A stretch of 64,000 nucleotides of DNA, taken from NCBI GenBank assembly GCA_977030845.1, contig OZ365115.1, positions 31,372,001 to 31,436,000 of the forward strand. The letters run 5' to 3'. The notes beneath the pieces are model-generated. The model had not been told where the DNA came from, did no database searches, and was given only the letters and a program-made list of their open reading frames with translations. This document shows positions 2,825 to 15,300 of the stretch, in pieces; within the stretch, counting starts at the first letter, position 1; every line of letters starts with the position of its first letter. Source of the stretch: Fimbriosthenelais zetlandica (Eukaryota). The position numbers and the translations under genes are program-made.

Positions 2825-2894
2825 GCAAGACAGGGGAAGTGAACCCCGGTCTCTGACGTTGAAGGCTAGTGTCTTACCTCTAGACTACCTGGCT
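2825..2894 (-). ncRNA. tRNA-like cassette 1 (loop CTTCAAC), degenerate B-box
   Basis: AGCCAGG TA GTCT AGAGGTA AGAC A CTAGC CTTCAAC GTCAG AGAC CGGGG TTCACTT CCCCT GTCTTGC, then TTTT at 2817-2814. Confidence 0.6.
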
Positions 2895-2970
2895 CTCAGG
2901 TCAACTGACTACACACCTTCAAATTTAGCCTGAACAGCCCATGACAAGGAGGAATCACAATGTGTATAAT

Positions 2971-3869
2971 CAGGGCTGTATTTAGGGGGGGTTACAGGGG
3001 TTACGTAACCCCCCCTGCTGATCAAAAAAAAAAATTCAAGTGTGGGAATAAGTTAAATGACTAGAAGATATGTCATCTGCCTGGTTTGTGTGTATCGAAC
3101 GCATTTCAATATGGCCTAAAGTCTAAGTGAGTCCATACAAGTCCATAGGCTACAAGTCAAAGCAAGTGTCAAAAGTTTCCTGTATTTTATTATAACTTCT
3201 CTGGTCACCTCAATCAACGTTGTATATAGGCTGCAATAGGTGTTCATGCCCTGCCTCTGTTCATTGTCAAGCTGAGTAATAAAACATGCATTTGAATTTA
3301 GCCTACGAAAGGCTTGTCCATTAGCCTACAGATGTAGCCTAAATTTCCTATAGGGCTATCGGTAGGTTACCATGGTTATTGGTAGGCCCTTAGAAGGGTT
3401 AAAAAGGATCATCATGATTCATCGGCTAAAGCTGTAAAATTAGGCCTACCTGAATTATGCTTTAGGCCTTGTAGCCTATATATAGGCCTACACCAAGATA
3501 GGGCCTACTAGCTTATTAGGCTAGTAGCCTTAGGGCTATTACTTTAGGCCCATCTTTACCGTACAATAAATGTTTCAGGGTCGTAGGCCTAAACCGTAGG
3601 CTATCGGTAGGCCCTATACAGGCCCAGACTTTAAAAAAATCCCTACTGGGATTGTTCTTTGAGAGCCTTATTCTTTGTTCCAAAATGCATCAAAATGCAC
3701 CAAATACCACCTTAAATTCCAAAATTTTCCGGGGGGGCTTGCCCCCGGACCCCCCTAGTTTTGCGTCACGCCTACGGCGCTCGCTTGTGAGTGCCTTCGG
3801 CACTCACCTTGATAATCAGTAATTGCCTAAACTGTAACCCCCCCTGAAAAATTCCTGCATACAGCCCTG
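2971..3869. mobile_element. MITE / non-autonomous DNA transposon with 11-bp TIR CAGGGCTGTAT and 6-bp TSD TATAAT
   Basis: Left end cagggctgtat (2971), right end atacagccctg (3869), subterminal GGGGGGGTTAC at both ends. TSD tataat at 2965-2970 and 3870-3875. The empty site is visible in A4 (reverse complement aatcacaatgtttaaaattattttgcccc). Confidence 0.9.
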
Positions 3870-5076
3870 TATAATTATTTTGCCCCCGGGCCCCTCCCCG
3901 GCCCCCAACCTCCACTCCAATCCCCATGTCTACCCCCAGGACTACCATCAACTCCCTCCGAAAACACCAGCCCGATTTGAAACGGCTAACATGTCAAAAT
4001 CCCTTAGAATAGCCCACTCTGTACGTACTGCCCATAGGCTCCAATGTTAAAAATTATTTAGCCCCCCGGACCCCTCCCCGGCCCCCAATCTCCACCCCAA
4101 CCCACATGTCTACGCCCAGCAGCCACCCGAACCCGCTCCCAAAAATTCAGCCCGATTCTTAGCTTCTAACCTGTCTAAATCCCTTCGATTCATCAAAAGT
4201 GTCCCGCCCATAGGCGCAATGTTAAAAGTCACTCACGATTACAGGAATGTGTGCCACAGAGCCGGTTTGCCAGTCCACTCAAATCGGCTTTTCTCTACTT
4301 GATATGTATTATTTTCACTCGAAATGACGGTTCTATATGACTTATGATCTCTACTGATAAATATTAAAAGAGCAGAGACGTAAAACGAGGACAACACCGA
4401 TTTCTGCGATATTGACAAATCGGCCTTGCGTATACCGGCCTATAATTTGGCCTTTTAAAAACCTTAACAGCGCCCTCTCACTAAAAGTCGAAAAAGTTGA
4501 ATAACTTCGTAAATAATGGGTCTAAAATTACAATTCAAACAGATTATTCTTAGTTGGGAGACCCCTCAGATGTCTATGTGGTTTTAGTTCCAATAACATT
4601 GATTTAAAATTTCGGATTTTCGAAATGGACTGAATTTCTTCATTTAGCATTGGAGTCAATGGAAGGAGGCGGCCGAGCGCCAGTGGCGACCCGAGCAGCG
4701 GCAAAAAGGTGAACTACCTTATAAGATTGGGTATTATACTTGGGATTCGGGGTATGGGGAGTGGGTCAGAATGGTACAATATTAATGGGATTTAGGGATG
4801 GGGCGGGGACTAGGCTAAATGACATTGAGCAAAATTAAAATATAGGAGGCCTACTCCTGCCGCTATCACCCGATGGATTTTTGTTTTATCTTTTTATCTT
4901 CTCTCTCTACCTTCCTCTCTCTCTCACTCTGTCTCCCTTCCACATGCCCTCTCTCTCCAGATGTGGCGCCACGCCCTCTCTCTCCAGCATTGGCAAGATC
5001 ATATACATGTACGGAGGTCTATCTGGTGAGGCGAGGAGGCGAGGCTTTTCATTCAGGTTATGCTGGCTTGCGCATA

Positions 5077-6145
5077 GTAGTTCACGTTTTCGCCGCTAGG
5101 GCATCTCGGGTCTCCACAGGCGCTTGGCCGCCTCCTTCCATTGACTCCAATGCTAAATGAAGAAATTCAGTCCATTTCGAAAATCCGAAATTTTAAATCA
5201 ATGTTATTGGAACTAAAACCACATAGACATCTGAGGGGTCTCCCAACTAAGAATAATCCGTTTGAATTGTAATTTTAGACCCATTATTTACGAAGTTATT
5301 CAACTTTTTCGACTTTTAGTGAGAGGGCGCTGTTAAGGTTTTTAAAAGGCCAAATTATAGGCCGGTATACGCAAGGCCGATTAGTCAATATCGCAGAAAT
5401 CGGTGTTGTCCTCGTTTTACGTCTCTGCTATTTTAATATTTATCAGAAGAGATCATAAGTCATATAGAACCGTCATTTCGAGTGAAAATAATACATATCA
5501 AGTAGAGAAAGGGCCGATTGGAGTGGACTGACAAACCGGCTCTGTGGAACACATTCCTGTAATCGTGAGTGATTTTTAACATTGAGCCTATGGGCGGGAC
5601 ACTTTTGATGAATTCAAGGGATTTAGATGGGTTAAAAGCATAGGATCGGGCTGAATTTTTAGGAGGGTGTTGGGATGGGTGCTGGGAGTAGACATGGGGG
5701 TTGGGGTGGAGGTTGGGACCCGGGGAGGGGTCCGGGGGGCTAAATATGTTTTAACATTGGAGCCTATAGAGTGGGCTATTCCAAAGAATTTTAACAGGTT
5801 AGCCGTTTCAAATCGGGCTGGTAGTTTTGGAGGGAGTTGTGCGGATAGACATGGTGATTGGGCTGGAGGTTGGGGCCAGGGAGGGGTCCCGGGGGCAAAA
5901 TAATTACAAATATTGTGATTAAGCCTTGTTCTGGGTGGTTCAGGCTAAATGTGTGGGGATGTAGGTCAGTCAACTGTGAGCCTGGTGGTCTAGCGGTAAG
6001 ACTCTGGCCCGGAGCGCGACAGACCGGGGTTCAATTCCCCGTCTTGTAAAACACTTTTCCTGTTCCCTGGTTCGTTGGTTGGGGGTGGGTGCTGGATATT
6101 CTTTTTCAACATTGATCGAAAGGCAGATACGATGCATTTAAGCGA
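5077..6145 (-). repeat. Arm A2 (inverted copy)
   Basis: Starts gtagttcac (5077-5085); near-identical reverse complement of A1 4300-4717 across 5110-5500, and more diverged further out. Confidence 0.9.
5979..6048 (+). ncRNA. tRNA-like cassette 2 (loop CCGGAGC)
   Basis: AGCCTGG TG GTCT AGCGGTA AGAC T CTGGC CCGGAGC GCGAC AGAC CGGGG TTCAATT CCCCG TCTTGTA; A-box TGGTCTAGCGG, B-box GGTTCAATTCC, TTTT at 6055-6058. Confidence 0.65.
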
Positions 6146-6165
6146 GTGTAACCGACAGACCTGTG

Positions 6166-6235
6166 AGCCAGGTAGTCTAGAGGTAAGACACTGGACTTGC
6201 AACACGAGAGACGGGGGTTCGATCCCCTGTCTAGT
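6166..6235 (+). ncRNA. tRNA-like cassette 3 (loop CTTGCAAC), tandem extra copy beyond A2
   Basis: AGCCAGGTAGTCTAGAGGTAAGACACTGGACTTGCAACACGAGAGACGGGGGTTCGATCCCCTGTCTAGT; B-box GGTTCGATCC, TTTTT at 6242-6246. Confidence 0.65.
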
Positions 6236-6423
6236 AAATTCTTTTTCGCTGCTGGATCACTACATATATATACGGCTTGTTAGTGTTCATTTGGGAGGGG
6301 ATCTTTTAGATAGCTGAGGCAAACGGAGCTTGGTTCCCGCCTGGTCGTACAGCTGGCGCTGTGGTGCACGGTGAGGTCGCTGAAGAAGGCTCGCAGTCTT
6401 CCTGTAAATATGTATGCCTAGTC

Positions 6424-7249
6424 ATCCATGGAGCAGAAAAATGGTTGGATCGAGTGAGGATTGAACCCTCGTCACTCGCTTGGCGGGCCAGTGTCTTACC
6501 TCTAGACTACCTGGCCGACAGGTCACTACACTGGTAGCTACGATTTAACCTTTGTAGGTACTGCCCATAGGTTCCAATGTTAAAAATTGTTTAGCCCCCC
6601 GGACCCCTCCCCGGGCCCCAACCTCCACCCCAAGCTCGATGTCTACCCCCAGGACCCATCCCAACTCACTCCCAAAAATCCAGCCCAATCCTTTGCTTCT
6701 AACCTGTCTAAATCCCTAAGATTCATTAAAAGTGTCCCGCCCATAGGCTCAATGTTAAAAATCACTCACGATTACAGGAGTGTGTGCCACAGAGCCGGTT
6801 TGCCAGTTCACTCAAATCGGCTCTTTCTATACTAATATGTGTTATTTTCACTCGAAACCACGGCAATGTATGACTTATGGCCTCTACTGATAAATACCAA
6901 AACAGCAGAGACGTAAAACGAGGATAACACCGATTTCTGCGAAGTTGACAAATCGGCCGAGCGTATACCGCCCTATAATTTGGCCTTTTAAAAACCTTAA
7001 CAGCGCCCTCTCACTAAATGTCGAAAAAGTTGAATAACTTAGTAAATAATGGGTCTAAAAATACAAACTAAACGGATTATTCTTAGTTGGGAAGTATTCT
7101 AAACAGTGGCCAGGTTTTTGAAGTGAGAAAATTGATTTAAAATTTCGGATTTTGAAAATGAACTGAATTTCTTCAATTAGCATTGGAGTCAATGGAAGGA
7201 GGCGCCTGAGCGCCAGTGGCGACCCGAGAGCGGCGGAAACGTGAACTAC
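6424..7249 (+). repeat. Arm A3 (direct copy of A1 with only one C-rich sub-repeat)
   Basis: Begins atccatggagcagaaaa (cf. A1 acccatggagcagaaaa) and ends gtgaactac at 7241-7249. Confidence 0.9.
6447..6516 (-). ncRNA. tRNA-like cassette 4 (loop CCGCCAA)
   Basis: GGCCAGG TA GTCT AGAGGTA AGAC A CTGGC CCGCCAA GCGAG TGAC GAGGG TTCAATC CTCAC TCGATCC, followed by AACCA and TTTTT (6441-6437). Confidence 0.65.
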
Positions 7250-7363
7250 TATGCGCCAGCCAGCATAGACCGAGTATCTGTCCCGGTGAGGCTATGTCGC
7301 TGGGAGGACGAGGCTTGTCATACAGGCTACAGCCAGCATAGCCTTCAGTCCTCGATGAAAGTT

Positions 7364-7554
7364 AAGGAACGCCCAGCAATGGTATAGGCCTTGTGATATG
7401 TATGGGAAATAGTGAAGGAATGTGAATAAGGGTATAAAGGCCTTGTGATATGTATGGGAAATAGTGAAGGAACGCCTAGCAACGGTATAGGCCTGATGAT
7501 ATGTATGGGAAATAGTGAAGGAACGCCCAGGCCGGGTATAGGCCTTGTGATATA
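7364..7554. repeat. 51-52 bp tandem repeat (3.7 copies) in spacer 2
   Basis: Units start at 7364, 7415, 7467 and 7518. Constant part ggtataggccttgtgatatgtatgggaaatagtgaaggaa; variable 10-11 nt segment. Confidence 0.95.
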
Positions 7555-7556
7555 CA

Positions 7557-7659
7557 GCGGCGGAACGGTGAACTACAGTACTATGATCTAGCCAAAGCTC
7601 TCTACTCCTTTCTCGGTGGGTTGGGTAGATCATAGTACCATAGTTCACCGTTCTGCCGC
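7557..7659. repeat. 34-bp-stem hairpin made from two copies of the arm inner-end motif
   Basis: gcggcggaacggtgaactacagtactatgatcta (7557-7590) pairs with tagatcatagtaccatagttcaccgttctgccgc (7626-7659) with 3 differences; 35-nt loop. Confidence 0.9.
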
Positions 7660-8741
7660 CGCAAATCTCGGGTCGCCAAAGTCGCGCTGGATTGCTCCTT
7701 CCATAGAGACCAATGCTATAGACCTCAAATTCCCTCCATTTTCAAAAATCGAAATTTTAAATTAATTTCAGTTGCACACGAAACCGATAGATACCTGGAG
7801 GTGCTTCCAACTAAGAATAATCCGTTTGAATTGTAATTTTAGACCCATTATTTACTAAGTTATTCAACTTTTTCGACATTTAGTGAGAGGGCGCTGTTAA
7901 GGTTTTTAAAAGGCCAAATTATAGGCCGGTATACGCAAGGCCGATTTGTCAACTTCGCAGAAATCAGTGTTAACTTCGCTTTACGTCTCTGTTCTTTTGG
8001 TATTTATCAGTAGAGGTCATAAGACATATATATCCGTAGTTTCGAGTGAAAATAACGCATATTAAGTAGAGAAAGAGCCGATTTGAGTGGACTGACAAAC
8101 CGGCTCTGTGGCACACATTCCTGTAATCGTGAGTGACTTTTAACATTGCGCCTATGGGCGGGACACTTTTGATGAATCGAAGGGATTTAGACAGGTTAGA
8201 AGCATAGAATCGGGCTGAATTTTTGGGAGCGGGTTCGGGTGGTTGCTGGGCGTAGACATGTGGGTTGGGGTGGAGATTGGGGGCCGGGGAGGGGTCCGGG
8301 GGGCTAAATAATTTTTAACATTGGAGCCTATGGGCAGTACGTACAGAGTGGGCTATTCTAAGGGATTTTGACATGTTAGCCGTTTCAAATCGGGCTGGTG
8401 TTTTCGGAGAGAATTGATGGTAGTCCTGGGGGTAGACATGGGGATTGGAGTGGAGGTTGGGGGCCGGGGAGGGGTCCTGGGGCAAAATAATTTTAAACAT
8501 TGTGATTTAGCCTTTGCACACGAAGGTGTGCCTTGTCCTGGGCGGTTCAGGCTAAATTTGAAAGGATGTTGTGTTCGTACCAGAGAGCCAGCTAGTCTAG
8601 AGGTAAGACACTGGCTTGGAACGTCAGAGACCGGGGTTCGTTTCCCCGTCTTGCTGGTGGGCGCTAATTTTTTTTTATCCAACTTTTATCGGAGTGAAAA
8701 TACGATGCATTTAGACGGATAGGTAGTATGGATTGGTGCTG
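7641..8741 (-). repeat. Arm A4 (inverted copy)
   Basis: Starts tagttcacc (7641); 8100-8500 is an almost exact reverse complement of A1 3876-4270; homology ends at gattggtgctg (8741). Confidence 0.9.
8586..8655 (+). ncRNA. tRNA-like cassette 5 (loop TTGGAAC), best-folding copy
   Basis: AGCCAGC TA GTCT AGAGGTA AGAC A CTGGC TTGGAAC GTCAG AGAC CGGGG TTCGTTT CCCCG TCTTGCT; D, anticodon and T stems pair fully, acceptor stem 5/7; T9 at 8668-8676. Confidence 0.65.
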
Positions 8742-11325: not shown

Positions 11326-12359
11326 CTAGTTGTGTGGCGCTCTCTTGCCTTTCATATATCCTATCCACCTCTTGGCTGTTTCTTCAAACACAGGGTCCTC
11401 CTCTACCGTGCTGATTAGGAGTAACTGGTTGATGTGTGTGGCGTGGTAGTCCCACCGTGCCAGGTTAGGAGCCACCCCTAGCGTCACATGACGTAAATCA
11501 TAGATGGACCCAGAACCGGTATCAAAGAGAGGTAGAAGAGCTTTGAGTGACTGGATACCAGTTTGATAGAGCTTCTCCGCGTGCTCCCTCTCCTCCACGG
11601 GAGCTATTGTCTTTAAATCATACAAACCGATGAGTGAATATATGAATCCGTTTAAAACAAAACAACTGGGTGTCGTTGGGTACTCTTCGTACCACTGGTA
11701 TTTGTCCATGAACCGTGCCTGCACACCACCGCTAGTACTCAATACATCAAATAAATGCGTGGCTTTTAAAGCTGACGTTAAATATTTTTTGTTTCTAGTC
11801 CTTAAGTAAGCTCTGACTAAGAGAGACATGGCTTGTCCTTGGGCCATGGCCGAGTACCAGCCAGGGGGTAATTGAAGCACCCCGTTGGCCAGTTTACGAG
11901 TCACCTGTATGGGCCAGCCACCCTGGCTATCCTGGTTCAACACCAGCCAGTTGGCGGCGTAATAAAACTGTGGAAGATGGGCGCTAGAGCAGAGGGTGAT
12001 GTTATCCACCCAGCCCCGGCCACGAAAGTTCACACTGATTAACCGGTTCAATACAAGCTTCTTGGATTTCTTGGGCTTGTTAGATTTGAGCATGATGCCC
12101 TTGTGGAAGTCTATATTGATGTCCCGGGTGATGTGGGTCCATCGATGGCGGTCACCAATACCGTAATAAATGTCATAGCCGGACACCTCCAACAGAGTCT
12201 GGCTGCACACATAGTGAATGTAGTACAAGGGAGCTCCCTTCCCTTTGGGTTCTATCACAACTGTTATGGAACCGTTGGTAACAAACTTGAAGTCAAATGA
12301 GAGGAAAAAACTTTTGCTAGAGTCTATCCGCAATCCCACTCCAGGGTTAGATAAAGTGT
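11326..12359 (-). CDS. GLCE: GLCE last coding exon (beta-sandwich plus catalytic alpha/alpha barrel)
   Basis: Acceptor ctttttccttttcag|ac; ends KGKRAPHN*. The first ~62 residues of the 406-aa ORF-track entry are intron. Confidence 0.97.
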
Positions 12360-15300
12360 CTGAAAAGGAAAAAGAAAGAATTCTAAGTAATGAGGCAACA
12401 GAGCTATTTCTTTGAGAATCTTCCGCATTATTAATGGAAAATAGTTTCAAATTACACACAAATGATTGTTGAAAGAGAATATTAACCAAAACCAGAAGCA
12501 CCAACTTTATGTGAATATTTTCAAATAATAAGTAGTTTTTGTTCACAATTTTCTACAGACATTAGATGTTTTAATGATTGATATGTAGGTAACCCACCTC
12601 TAGTGTTGAACTCAATGACCCGCGTGCCCCGTATAGGGTCTATATCATTATCTAGTGACGTCTCATCGTCGGGGAGGATCCAGCGACTCGTCAAGTCATC
12701 CTCAGCGTCCTCTAGCACCTTCCTGGTAGGAGGCTTGGTGGCCAGGTACTTACTGTAGTGACTCAGCCCATACTGAGCTATCTGTATAGGGTAGAAGTAA
12801 CCCTGAGGTCCCCACTGAGTAGAGATGGGTACTCCTAGAAGACATGAGCAAAATCAGAGGGTTAATATGCAACTCAATGAGGGCTGAAGTGAGTACCTGA
12901 AGTTGTGTGCCTCGAGAAGTGCATCTTGGGCACGAGTGACACTCACATAAGGCAAATGCAAATGATGGCACACAAATCAAATTGGTTCGTTATTGGTATG
13001 ATCAAATTTCTGATCAGAAGTTTCCATTGTAAGCAATTTCAAGGCTTTGCAATTGTCAATTTCCAGCAATCCCTTGTCCCTTGCGACAATCACACATGGT
13101 GGAGAACCCATATAAATAACTGAGAACCCATACAAATAAATGCAACATTACTGAACGCTAGTGCAATCCGCATCAGCCTGTTCCATGCCAAAACTGCACA
13201 GATTTTGTAGAATAGTATGTGCTCATGCCATGGTAAAATAGACGTATTAGAAGGAGGATATTGATATTTAGATGGACGCTGGACTCACCTTCTATACCAC
13301 TGATACATTTCACTCGATCCCTCACTTCCACATTATAATGCTCAAATGACATGAAGATACCCTCTGGAGTGTAGCGCCCCTGGGGGTTGTACACCTGAGA
13401 GTAGCTATGTTTCCACTCAAACCGTTCATAGCCATCATACTCTGTAAACTTGCCATACACCTGCAATCAAAAACACTCCATTTTAACGAGATTCACATTA
13501 CATTTTTAATATTAAAACGACAGGTTGATAAATTTTGAACCTCTTCTTTGAAATGTTGTTGTAATCAGACTAATTACTATAAATGACGTTATATTAATAT
13601 TTTTCTCATTAATTTAGTTGTTATTTTGGAAATCGCAATGACACACATAATAACCTATCCATAAATGTTACATATTCTGAACCTGTAATAAACAACTCGG
13701 ACCAAATCTATTCCACAACGGAATAAATAATACAGCTGAAGAGATATTTTTGGCGCTCGGGAGCCACAGTATCGTTTCAGTGACAATGCAATCATGGTGG
13801 GCGAAAGCATTCATGGACAGACAGAGATTTGATTTGTACATGGCCAATGGTGGGGAAGCATTTCTAATTCATGCCCTATCTAGGATTACTACTATGTATA
13901 TATATGCACCTGGGGCAAATGGCTCATCTAATGCTTACATAGACCGCTTCTCATTTGTCACACAGACATACAGAGTAATGTGATATGGATGCTATATGGA
14001 TGCCTGCCAGCAAACCAACCTTACAACAGAAGGCGGAAGTGTCCGCACCTCATATTCTCACAATTGTTTTATGATGGACTTCCACTTAACGACCACTTAA
14101 TTCACTTATACGACCATATCATACCAAATGGTGGTCAGAACCATTTTCGTCTAGCGATTTCATTCTCTAGAGCTGCAAGCATTGAAATCCCAAACTGAAT
14201 TGGCCTATAATAGGTTCTACTACAAGTGCAGCAAGAAAATTTCAATGAAACATTGTAAGTATCATTGTATTTAACTAAATGTCAGTTCAATGGCGGATAA
14301 TAAATCAACTAAAATCAATTCCAGAAGCTAATTCGGTCAACGAGGGTTAAGTACCGAGCTGATAAGAACAGTTAAGCTAACTCCTATGTTCTAAAAGGTA
14401 CAGAGAGGCCTGTCGCCCCTGTCGGTTGAACTTTGGTCCAGACAATCCCAGCAGCACACCCCAGTCCTGAGATAAGACTTGTCTGTTAGAGATAAGCAGG
14501 CTCAAACCTCTCCCGTGCGACCACTGCTAACACTATGCCTGTCAATGTAGCGGGCAGGCCAGCATTAGACTGGGCGACAGCTGGCACTATTTTTTTACCG
14601 CCCCAAAACATCCAGTCAACTTCCCTTCCAGCTGCTCTGGCGTAATGATTTGAATCCACTGTGGATTGATTCTGAAAGGCAGTATTTTCCTACCGACAGG
14701 AAAGAGATTTGACATTTGATAAGAGCCTCAATTTTTCAGACATCCTTTCATACCCTCTTCTAATGGTGGTTGATTTCCCTGAAAGCATTGGTGGGCTCGT
14801 GGCATTCAGCATGCACAGAGGGAATCTCTAAACTGATCGGTAAAAAATCTTTCCTACAACGAATCAGCCCTTCAACCACAACTACAACATTTTTGCTACA
14901 ACTTTCAACATTTTTGCTATTTTGCAATTCAATGAAATATAAATAAAGGGAACCTTTCACTCTTGAAATCTTTCAGTTCTGTTACTACCTAAACTAGCAA
15001 CAACCGAAGGGAGAACGAACGTTCATATTCAAAACCATGAACCTTTGGATTTTATTTCATATCTGCCCTAAAAAGATTTCAAAATTGATTTACTACTCTT
15101 TGTGAGCGGGAACAGGGCTATAGCCATGGAGAACGGGATTTCATTCTCCATGGGTATGGAGAATGATGGCAATATCAGATATCAAATAAATCACCGTATA
15201 TATTGTAATATACTCACCTCAAAATACTTGTTAATGAAGGTGAATGGGACGTAGACCTCATTGCCCTCGCGTCTACAGGTGACGGTATATTCACCATTGA

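What the first reader, a model, noticed from the sequence alone, without database searches (positions are those of the whole stretch)
3876..8500. Reciprocal mosaic similarity between arms: the 6-kb array behaves like a giant four-way junction
Seen: in the outer part A1 and A4 share variants (taggcgcaatgttaaaagtc at 4211-4230 and 8135-8154; cccccaatct; ccacccgaac) while A2 and A3 share the alternatives (taggctcaatgttaaaaatc at 5571-5590 and 6744-6763; cccaacct; cccatcccaac). Inward of about 4290/5505/6830/8065 the grouping switches: A1=A2 (atattaaaa, gcgatattgac, aaaagtcg, cttcgtaaat) and A3=A4 (ataccaaaa, gcgaagttgac, aaatgtcg, cttagtaaat). Inference: a single inversion crossover between two elements would give A1=A3 and A2=A4, not this. 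The pattern fits gene conversion or synthesis on a folded intermediate with a closing stem (A1/A4 outer) and three arms (A1/A2 inner, A2/A3 outer, A3/A4 inner).
Basis: partly seen in the sequence, partly recalled or inferred. Interest (0 to 1): 0.75.

Follow-up and report, generated by a model that had tools for sequence, protein, structure and literature searches.

The report
Patchwork arm in foldback repeat array
Two neighbouring hairpin-shaped, non-coding repeat elements in an animal genome include one arm (A1) stitched together from copies of two other arms by ordinary DNA-repair copying. The "four-way junction" symmetry is an artefact of comparing only four sequences.

Summary
- A1 outer (3891-4289) matches A4 at 98.5%, and A1 inner (4301-4597) matches A2 at 98.7%.
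- There is one clean switch between 4289 and 4301 (MaxChi p<=1e-4).
- The complementary pairings are not real. Against 4,000+ family pairs, A2/A3 outer (88.5%) sits at the 69th percentile and A3/A4 inner (84.2%) at the 17th.
- AU tests reject both as clades (p 0.028 and 0.0085).

**What the arms are.** They belong to a non-coding, tRNA-tipped foldback family with more than 1,500 genomic hits. The scan has noted this family elsewhere in this genome. Two paralogous four-arm arrays on the same chromosome lack the mosaic.

**What happened.**
- A1 is a three-part patchwork: A4-type outer, arm-2-type inner and a native tip that is 100% identical to the paralogues' arm 1.
- A2 and A4 keep their own lineage states, so the transfer was non-reciprocal. 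It was ectopic gene conversion or template-switch repair, not a crossover and not synthesis on a cruciform.
- Mosaics are common in the family: 43 of 91 arms, PHI-like p=0.0005. About 4290 is not a unique switch point.

**Limits and verdict.** No read-level check of the assembly was possible. This is an ordinary instance of a known process and of low interest.

The parts
2827..2894 (-). Outward-facing tRNA-like tip at the outer end of arm A1. It is separated from the arm by the inserted element.
   Evidence: Rfam tRNA, 35 bits. The region is 83% complementary to the A4 tip region (pair I11).
2971..3869 (.). Unrelated 899-bp element with terminal inverted repeats, inserted at the outer end of A1. 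Its ends read CAGGGCTGTAT and ATACAGCCCTG. The duplicated target TATAAT lies at 2965-2970 and 3870-3875.
   Evidence: Read directly from the sequence and compared with the uninterrupted A4 end. Dispersed full-length copies are 94-96% identical.
3870..4695 (+). Arm A1, the patchwork arm.
3891..4289 (+). A4-type tract of A1: 6 differences from A4 in 399 nt (98.5%).
   Evidence: This outer type is otherwise seen only in A4 and in C25:30267106 and C25:8344025 (95.6-96%).
4290..4300 (+). Switch interval between the two tracts. The 11 nt are identical in both donors. A1 lacks one C here.
   Evidence: The same 1-nt loss occurs in a few other family copies, so it is only weak evidence of a scar.
4301..4597 (+). 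Arm-2-type tract of A1: 4 differences from A2 in 297 nt (98.7%). It carries 4325T, 4335A and 4565C, which among the arms compared are found otherwise only in A2 and its paralogues Y2 and Z2.
4598..4695 (+). Native arm-1 tip of A1. It is 100% identical to arm 1 of the paralogous arrays Y and Z, and 96.9% identical to A2.
   Evidence: Only three sites separate it from arm-2 type: 4675, 4682 and 4687.
4696..5104 (.). Loop 1. It is collinear with, and about 94.5% identical to, the loops of arrays Y and Z.
5105..5930 (-). Arm A2. It is not a mosaic, and its closest relatives are Y2 and Z2 in every partition (96.5-100%).
5931..6549 (.). Spacer holding two convergent tRNA-like modules: 5978-6046 (+, below the Rfam threshold) and 6446-6516 (-).
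6550..7230 (+). Arm A3. It is itself chimeric relative to other loci: the outer part is like Y3 (96.3%) and the inner part is like C25:30267106 (94.6-99%). The switch is at the position equivalent to 4322-4328, about window 6855-6861.
7231..7666 (.). Loop 2, with 3.8 copies of a 51-bp tandem repeat at 7360-7553.
7667..8495 (-). Arm A4. Its tip is of the alternative 'beta' type, about 74% identical to the tips of the other three arms.
8586..8656 (+). Outward-facing tRNA-like tip of A4.
   Evidence: ARAGORN calls it tRNA-Ser(GGA). Rfam tRNA, 49 bits.

Best explanation
The 6-kb block is two adjacent copies of a non-coding, tRNA-tipped foldback repeat: long inverted arms around a loop. Members of this family often overwrite parts of one another by homology-driven, one-way copying, that is ectopic gene conversion or template-switch repair.

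Shown here:
- One arm, A1, is a three-part patchwork. Positions 3891-4289 were copied from, or homogenised with, A4.
- Positions 4301-4597 were copied from an arm of the A2/Y2/Z2 lineage. A2, 0.4 kb away across the hairpin, is the most likely donor.
- Positions 4598-4695 and loop 1 kept their original arm-1 sequence.
- The apparent A2=A3 and A3=A4 groupings are not relationships. They follow automatically when only four sequences are compared and two of them are near-identical.

Inferred:
- A break in A1 near 4290-4300 was repaired so that the left side copied A4 and the right side copied A2.
- This happened either in one event using two donors, or in two overlapping conversions. I rate these about equally likely.
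- No four-way folded intermediate is needed.
For: - The switch is sharp and significant: 4289-4301, chi2 84, p<=1e-4.
- A1/A4 outer and A1/A2 inner each rank 2nd among more than 4,000 family pairs. A2/A3 outer and A3/A4 inner are at the 69th and 17th percentiles.
- AU tests reject the A2+A3 clade (p 0.028) and the A3+A4 clade (p 0.0085). A1+A4 is a clade in the outer tree, with support 87.
- Polarity: the paralogous arrays Y (C25:4.64 Mb) and Z (C25:32.40 Mb) are collinear with the window from 3870/3896 to 7094/7268 (92.7-93.6%), and mostly 96-100% identical from about 4400 to 6800.
- Their arm 1, and that of a third locus, share the derived states 4336A, 4344T, 4567T, 4582A and 4595G. A1 lacks these.
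- A1 instead carries the arm-2-clade alleles 4325T, 4335A and 4565C, yet keeps the arm-1 allele 4682A at its tip.
- The transfer was non-reciprocal. A2 stays Y2/Z2-like in every partition. The outer type of A4 recurs on a related arm at C25:8344025.
- No inversion accompanied it, because order and orientation match Y and Z.
- Both tracts are a few hundred bp long and equally diverged (6/399 and 4/297), and each partner has private changes.
- The family context fits. 43 of 91 arms are fitted better by two parents, with a gain of at least 10 mismatches. Site incompatibility rises with distance from 0.229 to 0.327, with a PHI-like p of 0.0005 when A1 is excluded.
- Chimeric foldback-like elements made by ectopic recombination, and gene conversion between transposable-element copies, are documented (PMC2775673, PMC6598467, PMC8230782). 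Repair using two donors is shown in yeast (PMC10499017).
Against:
- A1 shares none of the three private changes of A2 (4353, 4370, 4417). It is marginally closer to Z2 (99.0%) than to A2 (98.7%). The donor could therefore be another arm-2 copy, or the event may date to about the time the arrays split.
- The inner end of the arm-2 tract rests on only three sites (MaxChi p 0.07-0.13).
- The left flank of A1 (2660-2969) is not of the Y/Z type: 81% to the Z1 flank, while Y and Z share theirs. So A1 outer may never have been Y1-like, and the earlier history is uncertain.
- Only 62 loci of more than 1,500 candidates could be fetched.
Confidence: 0.75

Rival explanations
1. Expansion history, a variant of the same process. 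The outermost pair (left flank + A1 outer, and A4 + right flank) are the two arms of one old element of the A3/A4 subfamily. Its original left arm was A1 outer joined to A3 inner. A break at about 4295-4325 in that arm was repaired one repeat period out of register from a Y/Z-type array. This copied in the 2.56-kb block 4301-6855. A1 outer and A4 outer were homogenised by arm-to-arm conversion.
For: - An uninterrupted arm with exactly this join exists at C25:30267106. It has A4-type outer (95.6%) and A3-type inner (94.6-99%), switching at 4295-4307.
- A3 switches from Y3-like to that type at 4322-4328, about 30 nt from the A1 switch in arm coordinates.
- High identity to Y and Z is confined to about 4400-6800.
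- The left flank of A1 is not Y/Z-type.
Against: - A separate step is still needed to make 4301-4597 arm-2-type rather than arm-1-type.
- A recent conversion is still needed to explain 98.5% identity in the outer domain next to about 83-85% in the flanks.
- The flanks are about equally distant from everything (81-85%), so they do not positively pair A1 with A4.
Confidence: 0.3
2. The four arms fold into a giant four-way junction with four stems: A1/A4 outer, A1/A2 inner, A2/A3 outer and A3/A4 inner. Conversion or synthesis on that structure homogenised all four stems.
For: - Two of the four predicted stems are near-identical.
- A single strand would favour this fold slightly, simply because A1 outer pairs best with A4.
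Against: - The other two stems are at 88.5% and 84.2%, which is ordinary or below the family background.
- Both are rejected as clades.
- A2 and A3 merely share the family's common states.
- The paralogous four-arm arrays Y and Z show no such pattern: arm 1 vs arm 4 outer 90.2%, arm 1 vs arm 2 inner 93.7-95.1%.
Confidence: 0.03
3. Reciprocal crossover, either an inversion between inverted arms as with Galileo in Drosophila or unequal exchange, produced the chimeric arm.
For: Chimeric foldback-like copies at inversion breakpoints are documented. There, the terminal repeats are more alike between copies than within a copy (PMC2775673).
Against: - A crossover shuffles sequence but cannot create new near-identity.
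- A2 inner and A4 outer are not the reciprocal products. They keep their own lineage states.
- Order and orientation from A1 to A3 match arrays Y and Z.
Confidence: 0.02
4. Assembly or polishing artefact. Reads from A4 and A2 were mis-assigned to A1 in a repeat-rich region.
For: - The region is a dense nest of 84-98% similar repeats.
- No read-level check could be made.
Against: - The tracts are not 100% identical to their donors.
- A1 has private changes inside both tracts (4160/4161, 4541). A4 and A2 have three private changes each.
- Donor and recipient differ by about 10% outside the tracts, which makes mis-mapping unlikely.
- The genome search found no second, unconverted copy of the locus.
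Confidence: 0.07
5. The switch reflects a genome-wide module boundary or recombination hotspot at about 4290-4330 in this family, where outer and inner domains reassort. On this view it is not an event peculiar to this array.
For: - All carriers of the A4-type outer cassette change partner within 4289-4328: A1, A4, C25:30267106 and C25:8344025. So does A3.
- The 4270-4309 bin holds 6.2 of 43 inferred breakpoints, against about 3.6 expected.
Against: - Breakpoints are spread over 4190-4550, and the peak at 4390-4429 is larger (8.1).
- The enrichment is about 1.7-fold and several of the cases are not independent.
- The left-right distance-matrix correlation dips only slightly at 4297.
Confidence: 0.12

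Closest known systems
Interlocus (ectopic) gene conversion between transposable-element copies, e.g. among Alu elements (PMC8230782, PMC6598467)
   Same: A tract of a few hundred bp is copied one way between dispersed or neighbouring repeat copies. This gives mosaic copies with sharp boundaries and leaves the donors unchanged.
   Different: Here the substrate is a long-armed foldback element. One recipient arm carries two abutting tracts from two different donors in inverted orientation.
Foldback-type elements: Drosophila FB, Galileo/Newton/Kepler, Tetris, sea-urchin TU (PMC2775673, PMC4079207)
   Same: - Long inverted arms built from a flanking part, an outer domain with tandem subrepeats (about 180 bp here, about 220 bp in Tetris), an inner domain and a variable middle.
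- No coding capacity.
- Many rearranged and chimeric copies.
   Different: - The arm ends here carry outward-facing tRNA-like modules.
- No transposase link or target-site duplication of the foldback element itself was established here.
- Galileo chimeras arose by reciprocal crossover with inversion, which is excluded here.
Arm-to-arm gene conversion in large palindromes, e.g. primate sex-chromosome palindromes (background knowledge; see also PMC11168930)
   Same: Inverted arms in cis copy from one another without inverting the spacer. The A2 to A1 tract and the A1/A4 tract are both of this kind.
   Different: - The arms here are about 0.8 kb rather than tens of kb.
- Conversion is patchy: the tip next to the loop is unconverted.
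- One tract comes from the arm of the neighbouring element.
Template switching and multi-invasion during break repair (PMC10499017 and the work it cites: Smith 2007, Anand 2014, Piazza 2017)
   Same: One broken molecule engages two homologous donors and ends up as a chimeric repeat. This is the nearest mechanistic match to a single-event origin of A1.
   Different: This was shown experimentally in yeast. Here it is inferred from sequence alone and cannot be told apart from two successive overlapping conversions.

Membership tests
Interlocus / ectopic gene conversion product | A statistically supported mosaic with a discrete breakpoint | tested here: met
   MaxChi places the breakpoint at 4289-4301, chi2 84, p<=1e-4.
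Interlocus / ectopic gene conversion product | Non-reciprocal: the donors are unchanged | tested here: met
   A2 remains Y2/Z2-like in all partitions. The outer type of A4 is shared with a related arm at C25:8344025.
Interlocus / ectopic gene conversion product | Polarity shown by outgroups or paralogues | tested here: met
   Three loci keep arm-1-specific alleles that A1 lacks between 4336 and 4595. A1 carries arm-2-clade-only alleles. For the outer tract the direction is less certain, because the flank is not Y/Z-type.
Interlocus / ectopic gene conversion product | No associated crossover or rearrangement | tested here: met
   Order and orientation from A1 to A3 are collinear with arrays Y and Z.
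Interlocus / ectopic gene conversion product | The mosaic exists in the organism, not only in the assembly | not testable with these tools
Foldback-type repeat element (structural class) | Long inverted arms around a middle segment, present in many dispersed copies | tested here: met
   Arms are about 0.8 kb and loops 0.14-0.65 kb. There are 1,527-1,574 first-look candidates, and most fetched copies occur as inverted pairs.
Foldback-type repeat element (structural class) | Arms internally repetitive (outer domain of tandem subrepeats) | tested here: met
   Subrepeats of 180-bp period at 3883-4008 and 4063-4188, and likewise in the other arms (families D4 and D5).
Foldback-type repeat element (structural class) | No coding capacity | tested here: met
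   No ORF of 130 aa or more between 835 and 11325.
Foldback-type repeat element (structural class) | Target-site duplications and a cognate transposase | not tested
   The ends of the foldback units were not mapped to empty sites, and no autonomous copy was sought.
   A2/A3 outer is at the 69th percentile and A3/A4 inner at the 17th percentile. AU tests reject both clades.
   Arrays Y and Z: arm 1 vs arm 4 outer 90.2%, and arm 1 vs arm 2 inner 93.7-95.1%.
Inversion by ectopic crossover between inverted copies (Galileo type) | Two reciprocal chimeric copies flanking an inverted segment | tested here: not met
   Only A1 is chimeric with respect to A2 and A4. The intervening segment is not inverted relative to Y and Z.

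The most novel reading that the evidence does not exclude
A position about 60-100 nt inside the inner domain (arm coordinates 4290-4330) may be a preferred break or switch site in this foldback family. The two sides of a break there would be repaired independently from different copies, so that outer cassettes (about 400 bp) and inner domains reassort as modules. This would explain two things: all four carriers of the A4-type outer cassette, and A3, change partner within about 40 nt of each other, and A1 took its two sides from two donors. It would point to a structure-specific cleavage site in extruded hairpins.
Probability: 0.12. Interest if true: 0.45.

Novelty: new member of a known kind. 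Interest (0 to 1): 0.17.

Why it matters
**Method.** Four-sequence site patterns cannot show reciprocal pairing. Adding family-wide outgroups removed the striking symmetry.

**Biology.**
- This is one clear, datable case of one-way copying between arms of neighbouring foldback elements.
- Nearly half of the sampled copies in the family are mosaics, so copy-to-copy identity in this family cannot be read as insertion age.
- Subfamily trees must be built per segment.
- The near-identical inverted tracts 3.8 kb apart (A1 and A4 outer) are also a potential substrate for local inversion.

None of this is new in kind.

Tried and rejected
- **More family copies.** The analysis therefore rests on 92 arms from 62 loci, out of more than 1,500 candidates.
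- **Left-versus-right distance-matrix correlation as a hotspot test.** Correlations are low everywhere (0-0.5) and dip only slightly at 4297. The test cannot separate recombination from a star-like phylogeny, so I replaced it with a two-parent breakpoint scan and a PHI-like test.
- **The 1-nt deletion at 4289/4290 as a junction scar.** I downgraded this because the same loss occurs in several other copies.
- **The end of the A1/A4 tract at the inserted element as proof of a heterology stop.** I weakened this because the A4-type cassette also loses similarity near the arm start at C25:30267106, which has no insertion.
- **Nested insertion of young elements.** Rejected because A1 tip, loop 1, A2, the spacer and A3 outer are collinear with arrays Y and Z.
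- **Reciprocal crossover or inversion.** Rejected (see rival explanations).
- **Organism identity.** Not pursued. The window has a D-glucuronyl C5-epimerase exon, so it is an animal. I ran no further search on it.

Full report
**Anatomy**

The window is C25:31,372,001-31,436,000 of a 447-Mb, 79-contig assembly. It is an animal genome, because a D-glucuronyl C5-epimerase exon lies at 11326-12546.

Positions 2827-8656 hold two adjacent hairpin-type repeats:
- First element: arm A1 (3870-4695, +), loop 1 (4696-5104), arm A2 (5105-5930, -).
- A 0.6-kb spacer with two convergent tRNA-like modules.
- Second element: arm A3 (6550-7230, +), loop 2 (7231-7666, containing a 51-bp tandem repeat), arm A4 (7667-8495, -).
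- Outward-facing tRNA-like tips at 2827-2894 and 8586-8656.

There is no ORF of 130 aa or more between 835 and 11325.

A1 is separated from its tip by an unrelated 899-bp insertion at 2971-3869.
- The insertion has terminal inverted repeats, and its TATAAT target duplication lies at 2965-2970 and 3870-3875.
- The inserted element has 94-96% identical full-length copies elsewhere.

**Checking the observation**

The repeat finder gives two outstanding pairs:
- A1/A4, 98% complementary over 3870-4292.
- A1/A2, 98% complementary over 4290-4695.

All other arm pairs are 86-92%.

In a four-arm alignment the informative sites are 14|23 up to 4289 and 12|34 from 4301. A maximum-chi-square test with A1 as child and A4 and A2 as parents gives:
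- 41 A4-like and 2 A2-like sites on the left.
- 5 A4-like and 63 A2-like sites on the right.
- A breakpoint between 4289 and 4301, chi2 84, permutation p<=1e-4.

The seven exceptions are private changes of A4 (3952, 3955) and A2 (4353, 4370, 4417), plus the sites at the A1 tip. So the switch is real and clean.

**The reciprocal half**

With four sequences there is one internal branch. If A1 and A4 are near-identical, every site where they differ from both others scores as 14|23, whether or not A2 and A3 are related.

I therefore brought in the rest of the family.
- The arm has 1,527-1,574 first-look candidates in this genome.
- I could fetch 62 loci and aligned 92 arms from them.

| Pair | Partition | Identity | Rank or percentile among family pairs |
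|---|---|---|---|
| A1/A4 | outer | 98.5% | rank 2 of 4,186 |
| A1/A2 | inner | 98.7% | rank 2 of 4,095 |
| A2/A3 | outer | 88.5% | 69th percentile (median 87.2%) |
| A3/A4 | inner | 84.2% | 17th percentile |

- In trees, A2 outer groups with arms at C25:4641896 and C25:32401961, and A3 outer with C25:4643354.
- A3 inner groups with C25:30267106, and A4 inner with other arms again.
- AU tests reject a forced A2+A3 clade in the outer partition (delta lnL 62.7, p 0.028).
- They also reject a forced A3+A4 clade in the inner partition (delta lnL 72.0, p 0.0085).
- A1+A4 is a clade in the outer tree. A1+A2 is not rejected in the inner tree.
- At the 14|23 sites, A2 and A3 carry the state found in nearly all other copies.
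- The A2/A3 20-mer occurs in 22 of the 62 fetched loci, and the A1/A4 20-mer in 17.

**Paralogous arrays give polarity**

Two other four-arm arrays lie on the same chromosome: Y at 4.64 Mb and Z at 32.40 Mb (reverse strand).
- Y is collinear with window 3870-7094 (93.6%) and Z with 3896-7268 (92.7%).
- Both are mostly 96-100% identical to the window from about 4400 to 6800.
- Neither shows the mosaic. Arm 1 vs arm 4 outer is 90.2% in Y. Arm 1 vs arm 2 inner is 93.7% in Y and 95.1% in Z.
- A2 is close to Y2 and Z2 throughout (96.5-100%), so it is not a mosaic.

A1 is made of three parts.
1. **Positions 3891-4289.** This outer type is otherwise seen only in A4 (98.5%), C25:8344025 (96.0%) and C25:30267106 (95.6%).
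2. **Positions 4301-4597.**
   - A1 carries 4325T, 4335A and 4565C. Among the arms compared, these are otherwise found only in A2, Y2 and Z2.
   - A1 lacks the arm-1 alleles 4336A, 4344T, 4567T, 4582A and 4595G, which Y1, Z1 and C25:32912497 share.
3. **Positions 4598-4695.**
   - A1 is 100% identical to Y1 and Z1 and 96.9% to A2.
   - It keeps the arm-1 allele 4682A.

The inner limit of the arm-2 tract rests on only three sites.

**Mechanism**

Because A2 and A4 keep the states of their own lineages, the transfers were one-way. Because order and orientation match Y and Z, no inversion accompanied them. This rules out a reciprocal crossover of the Galileo type (PMC2775673) and points to gene conversion.

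The two tracts have these properties:
- Lengths of about 400 and about 300-385 bp.
- Equal divergence (6/399 and 4/297).
- Private changes in both partners.
- They abut within 11 nt that are identical in both donors.

One break near 4290-4300, with each side repaired from a different donor, would give this. So would a template switch between donors, as in yeast multi-invasion and template-switch repair (PMC10499017). Two successive conversions, the second overwriting part of the first, would give the same pattern. I cannot separate these.

A1 shares none of the three private changes of A2 and is as close to Z2 as to A2. The inner tract therefore dates to about the time the three arrays diverged, or else came from another arm-2 copy.

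**An alternative history that the data allow**

- The left flank of A1 (2660-2969) is only 81% identical to the Z1 flank, whereas Y and Z share their flank within a 3.6-kb unit.
- A3 is itself chimeric: Y3-like outer and C25:30267106-like inner, switching at the equivalent of 4322-4328.
- The arm at C25:30267106 joins A4-type outer to A3-type inner, switching at 4295-4307.

So the locus may once have been a single element whose left arm was A1 outer + A3 inner. The 2.56-kb Y/Z-type block (4301-6855) would then have been copied into it one period out of register.

This history still needs two further steps:
- A recent homogenisation of A1 and A4 outer, because the flanks are only about 83-85% alike.
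- A step that made 4301-4597 arm-2-type.

It is therefore a variant of the same process, not a different one.

**Family context**

- The arm tips come in two types that are about 73% alike. Elements occur as alpha/alpha, alpha/beta and beta/beta.
- 43 of 91 arms are fitted better by two parents than by the best single relative, with a gain of at least 10 mismatches.
- The inferred breakpoints spread over 4190-4550, with modest peaks at 4270-4309 and 4390-4429.
- With A1 left out, four-gamete incompatibility rises with distance from 0.229 to 0.327, and a PHI-like permutation test gives p=0.0005.
- Exchange between copies is therefore routine in this family, and about 4290 is at most a mild preference.
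- Earlier notes of this scan describe the same tRNA-tipped foldback family at other places in this genome. One reports two inverted copies that had swapped sequence. I did not test those loci.

**Comparison with known systems**

- The architecture matches the foldback class as drawn for Tetris and Galileo: flank, outer domain with tandem subrepeats, inner domain, variable middle, no ORF (PMC4079207; PMC2775673).
- The tRNA-like tips are a difference. I did not map target-site duplications or look for a transposase.
- The process matches interlocus gene conversion between repeat copies (PMC6598467, PMC8230782).

**Limits**

The private substitutions in both tracts argue against a polishing artefact.
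- Only about 4% of family candidates were sampled.

**Verdict**

The four-way-junction reading is not supported, and gene conversion is supported. This is an ordinary instance of a known process in a foldback family already noted elsewhere in this genome.

Noticed in passing
window 2971-3869 (TSD 2965-2970 and 3870-3875): An 899-bp non-coding element with 11-bp terminal inverted repeats (CAGGGCTGTAT / ATACAGCCCTG) and a 6-bp TATAAT target duplication is inserted in the outer end of A1. Full-length relatives at C19:10286819 (96%) and C13:10341474 (94%), plus many partial hits, show a dispersed family.
   Followed up: partly
L031 4428-8980 (C25:4.64 Mb) and L032/L009 (C25:32.40 Mb, reverse strand): Two further four-arm arrays lie on the same chromosome. 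They share a 3.6-kb unit with each other (flank, arm 1, loop, arm 2, spacer, arm 3; 92.7%) and about 2.3-3.4 kb with the window. So the compound arrangement, not just the single hairpin, exists in several copies.
   Followed up: partly
arm coordinates 4598-4695 and equivalents (window 5105-5200, 7133-7230, 7667-7765): The roughly 100 nt of each arm next to the loop come in two types that are about 73% alike. Elements occur as alpha/alpha, alpha/beta and beta/beta pairs. In array Y the second element appears to have the two types in the opposite order to X and Z, which suggests a flipped middle segment.
   Followed up: partly
C25:8345593 (-), in L036: This is the strongest mosaic among the sampled arms. 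The best single relative leaves 55 mismatches, while two parents (C25:8944716 and C25:6190672) leave 14, with a breakpoint at arm position 4458-4461.
   Followed up: no
window 7360-7553: A 51-bp tandem repeat, 3.8 copies at 80% match, lies inside loop 2. A 47-nt inverted repeat follows at 7549-7667.
   Followed up: no
window 5978-6046 (+), 6446-6516 (-), 2827-2894 (-), 8586-8656 (+): There are four tRNA-like modules at the arm ends. Three pass the Rfam tRNA threshold (31-49 bits). Only 8586-8656 is called by ARAGORN, as Ser-GGA. The flank domain that carries them diverges faster than the arms: 94% between paralogues whose arms are 98-99% alike.
   Followed up: no
window 11326-12546 (-): A 406-aa open frame encodes the beta-sandwich and C-terminal domains of D-glucuronyl C5-epimerase (Pfam E 5e-70). 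It is the nearest recognisable gene on the right of the array.
   Followed up: no
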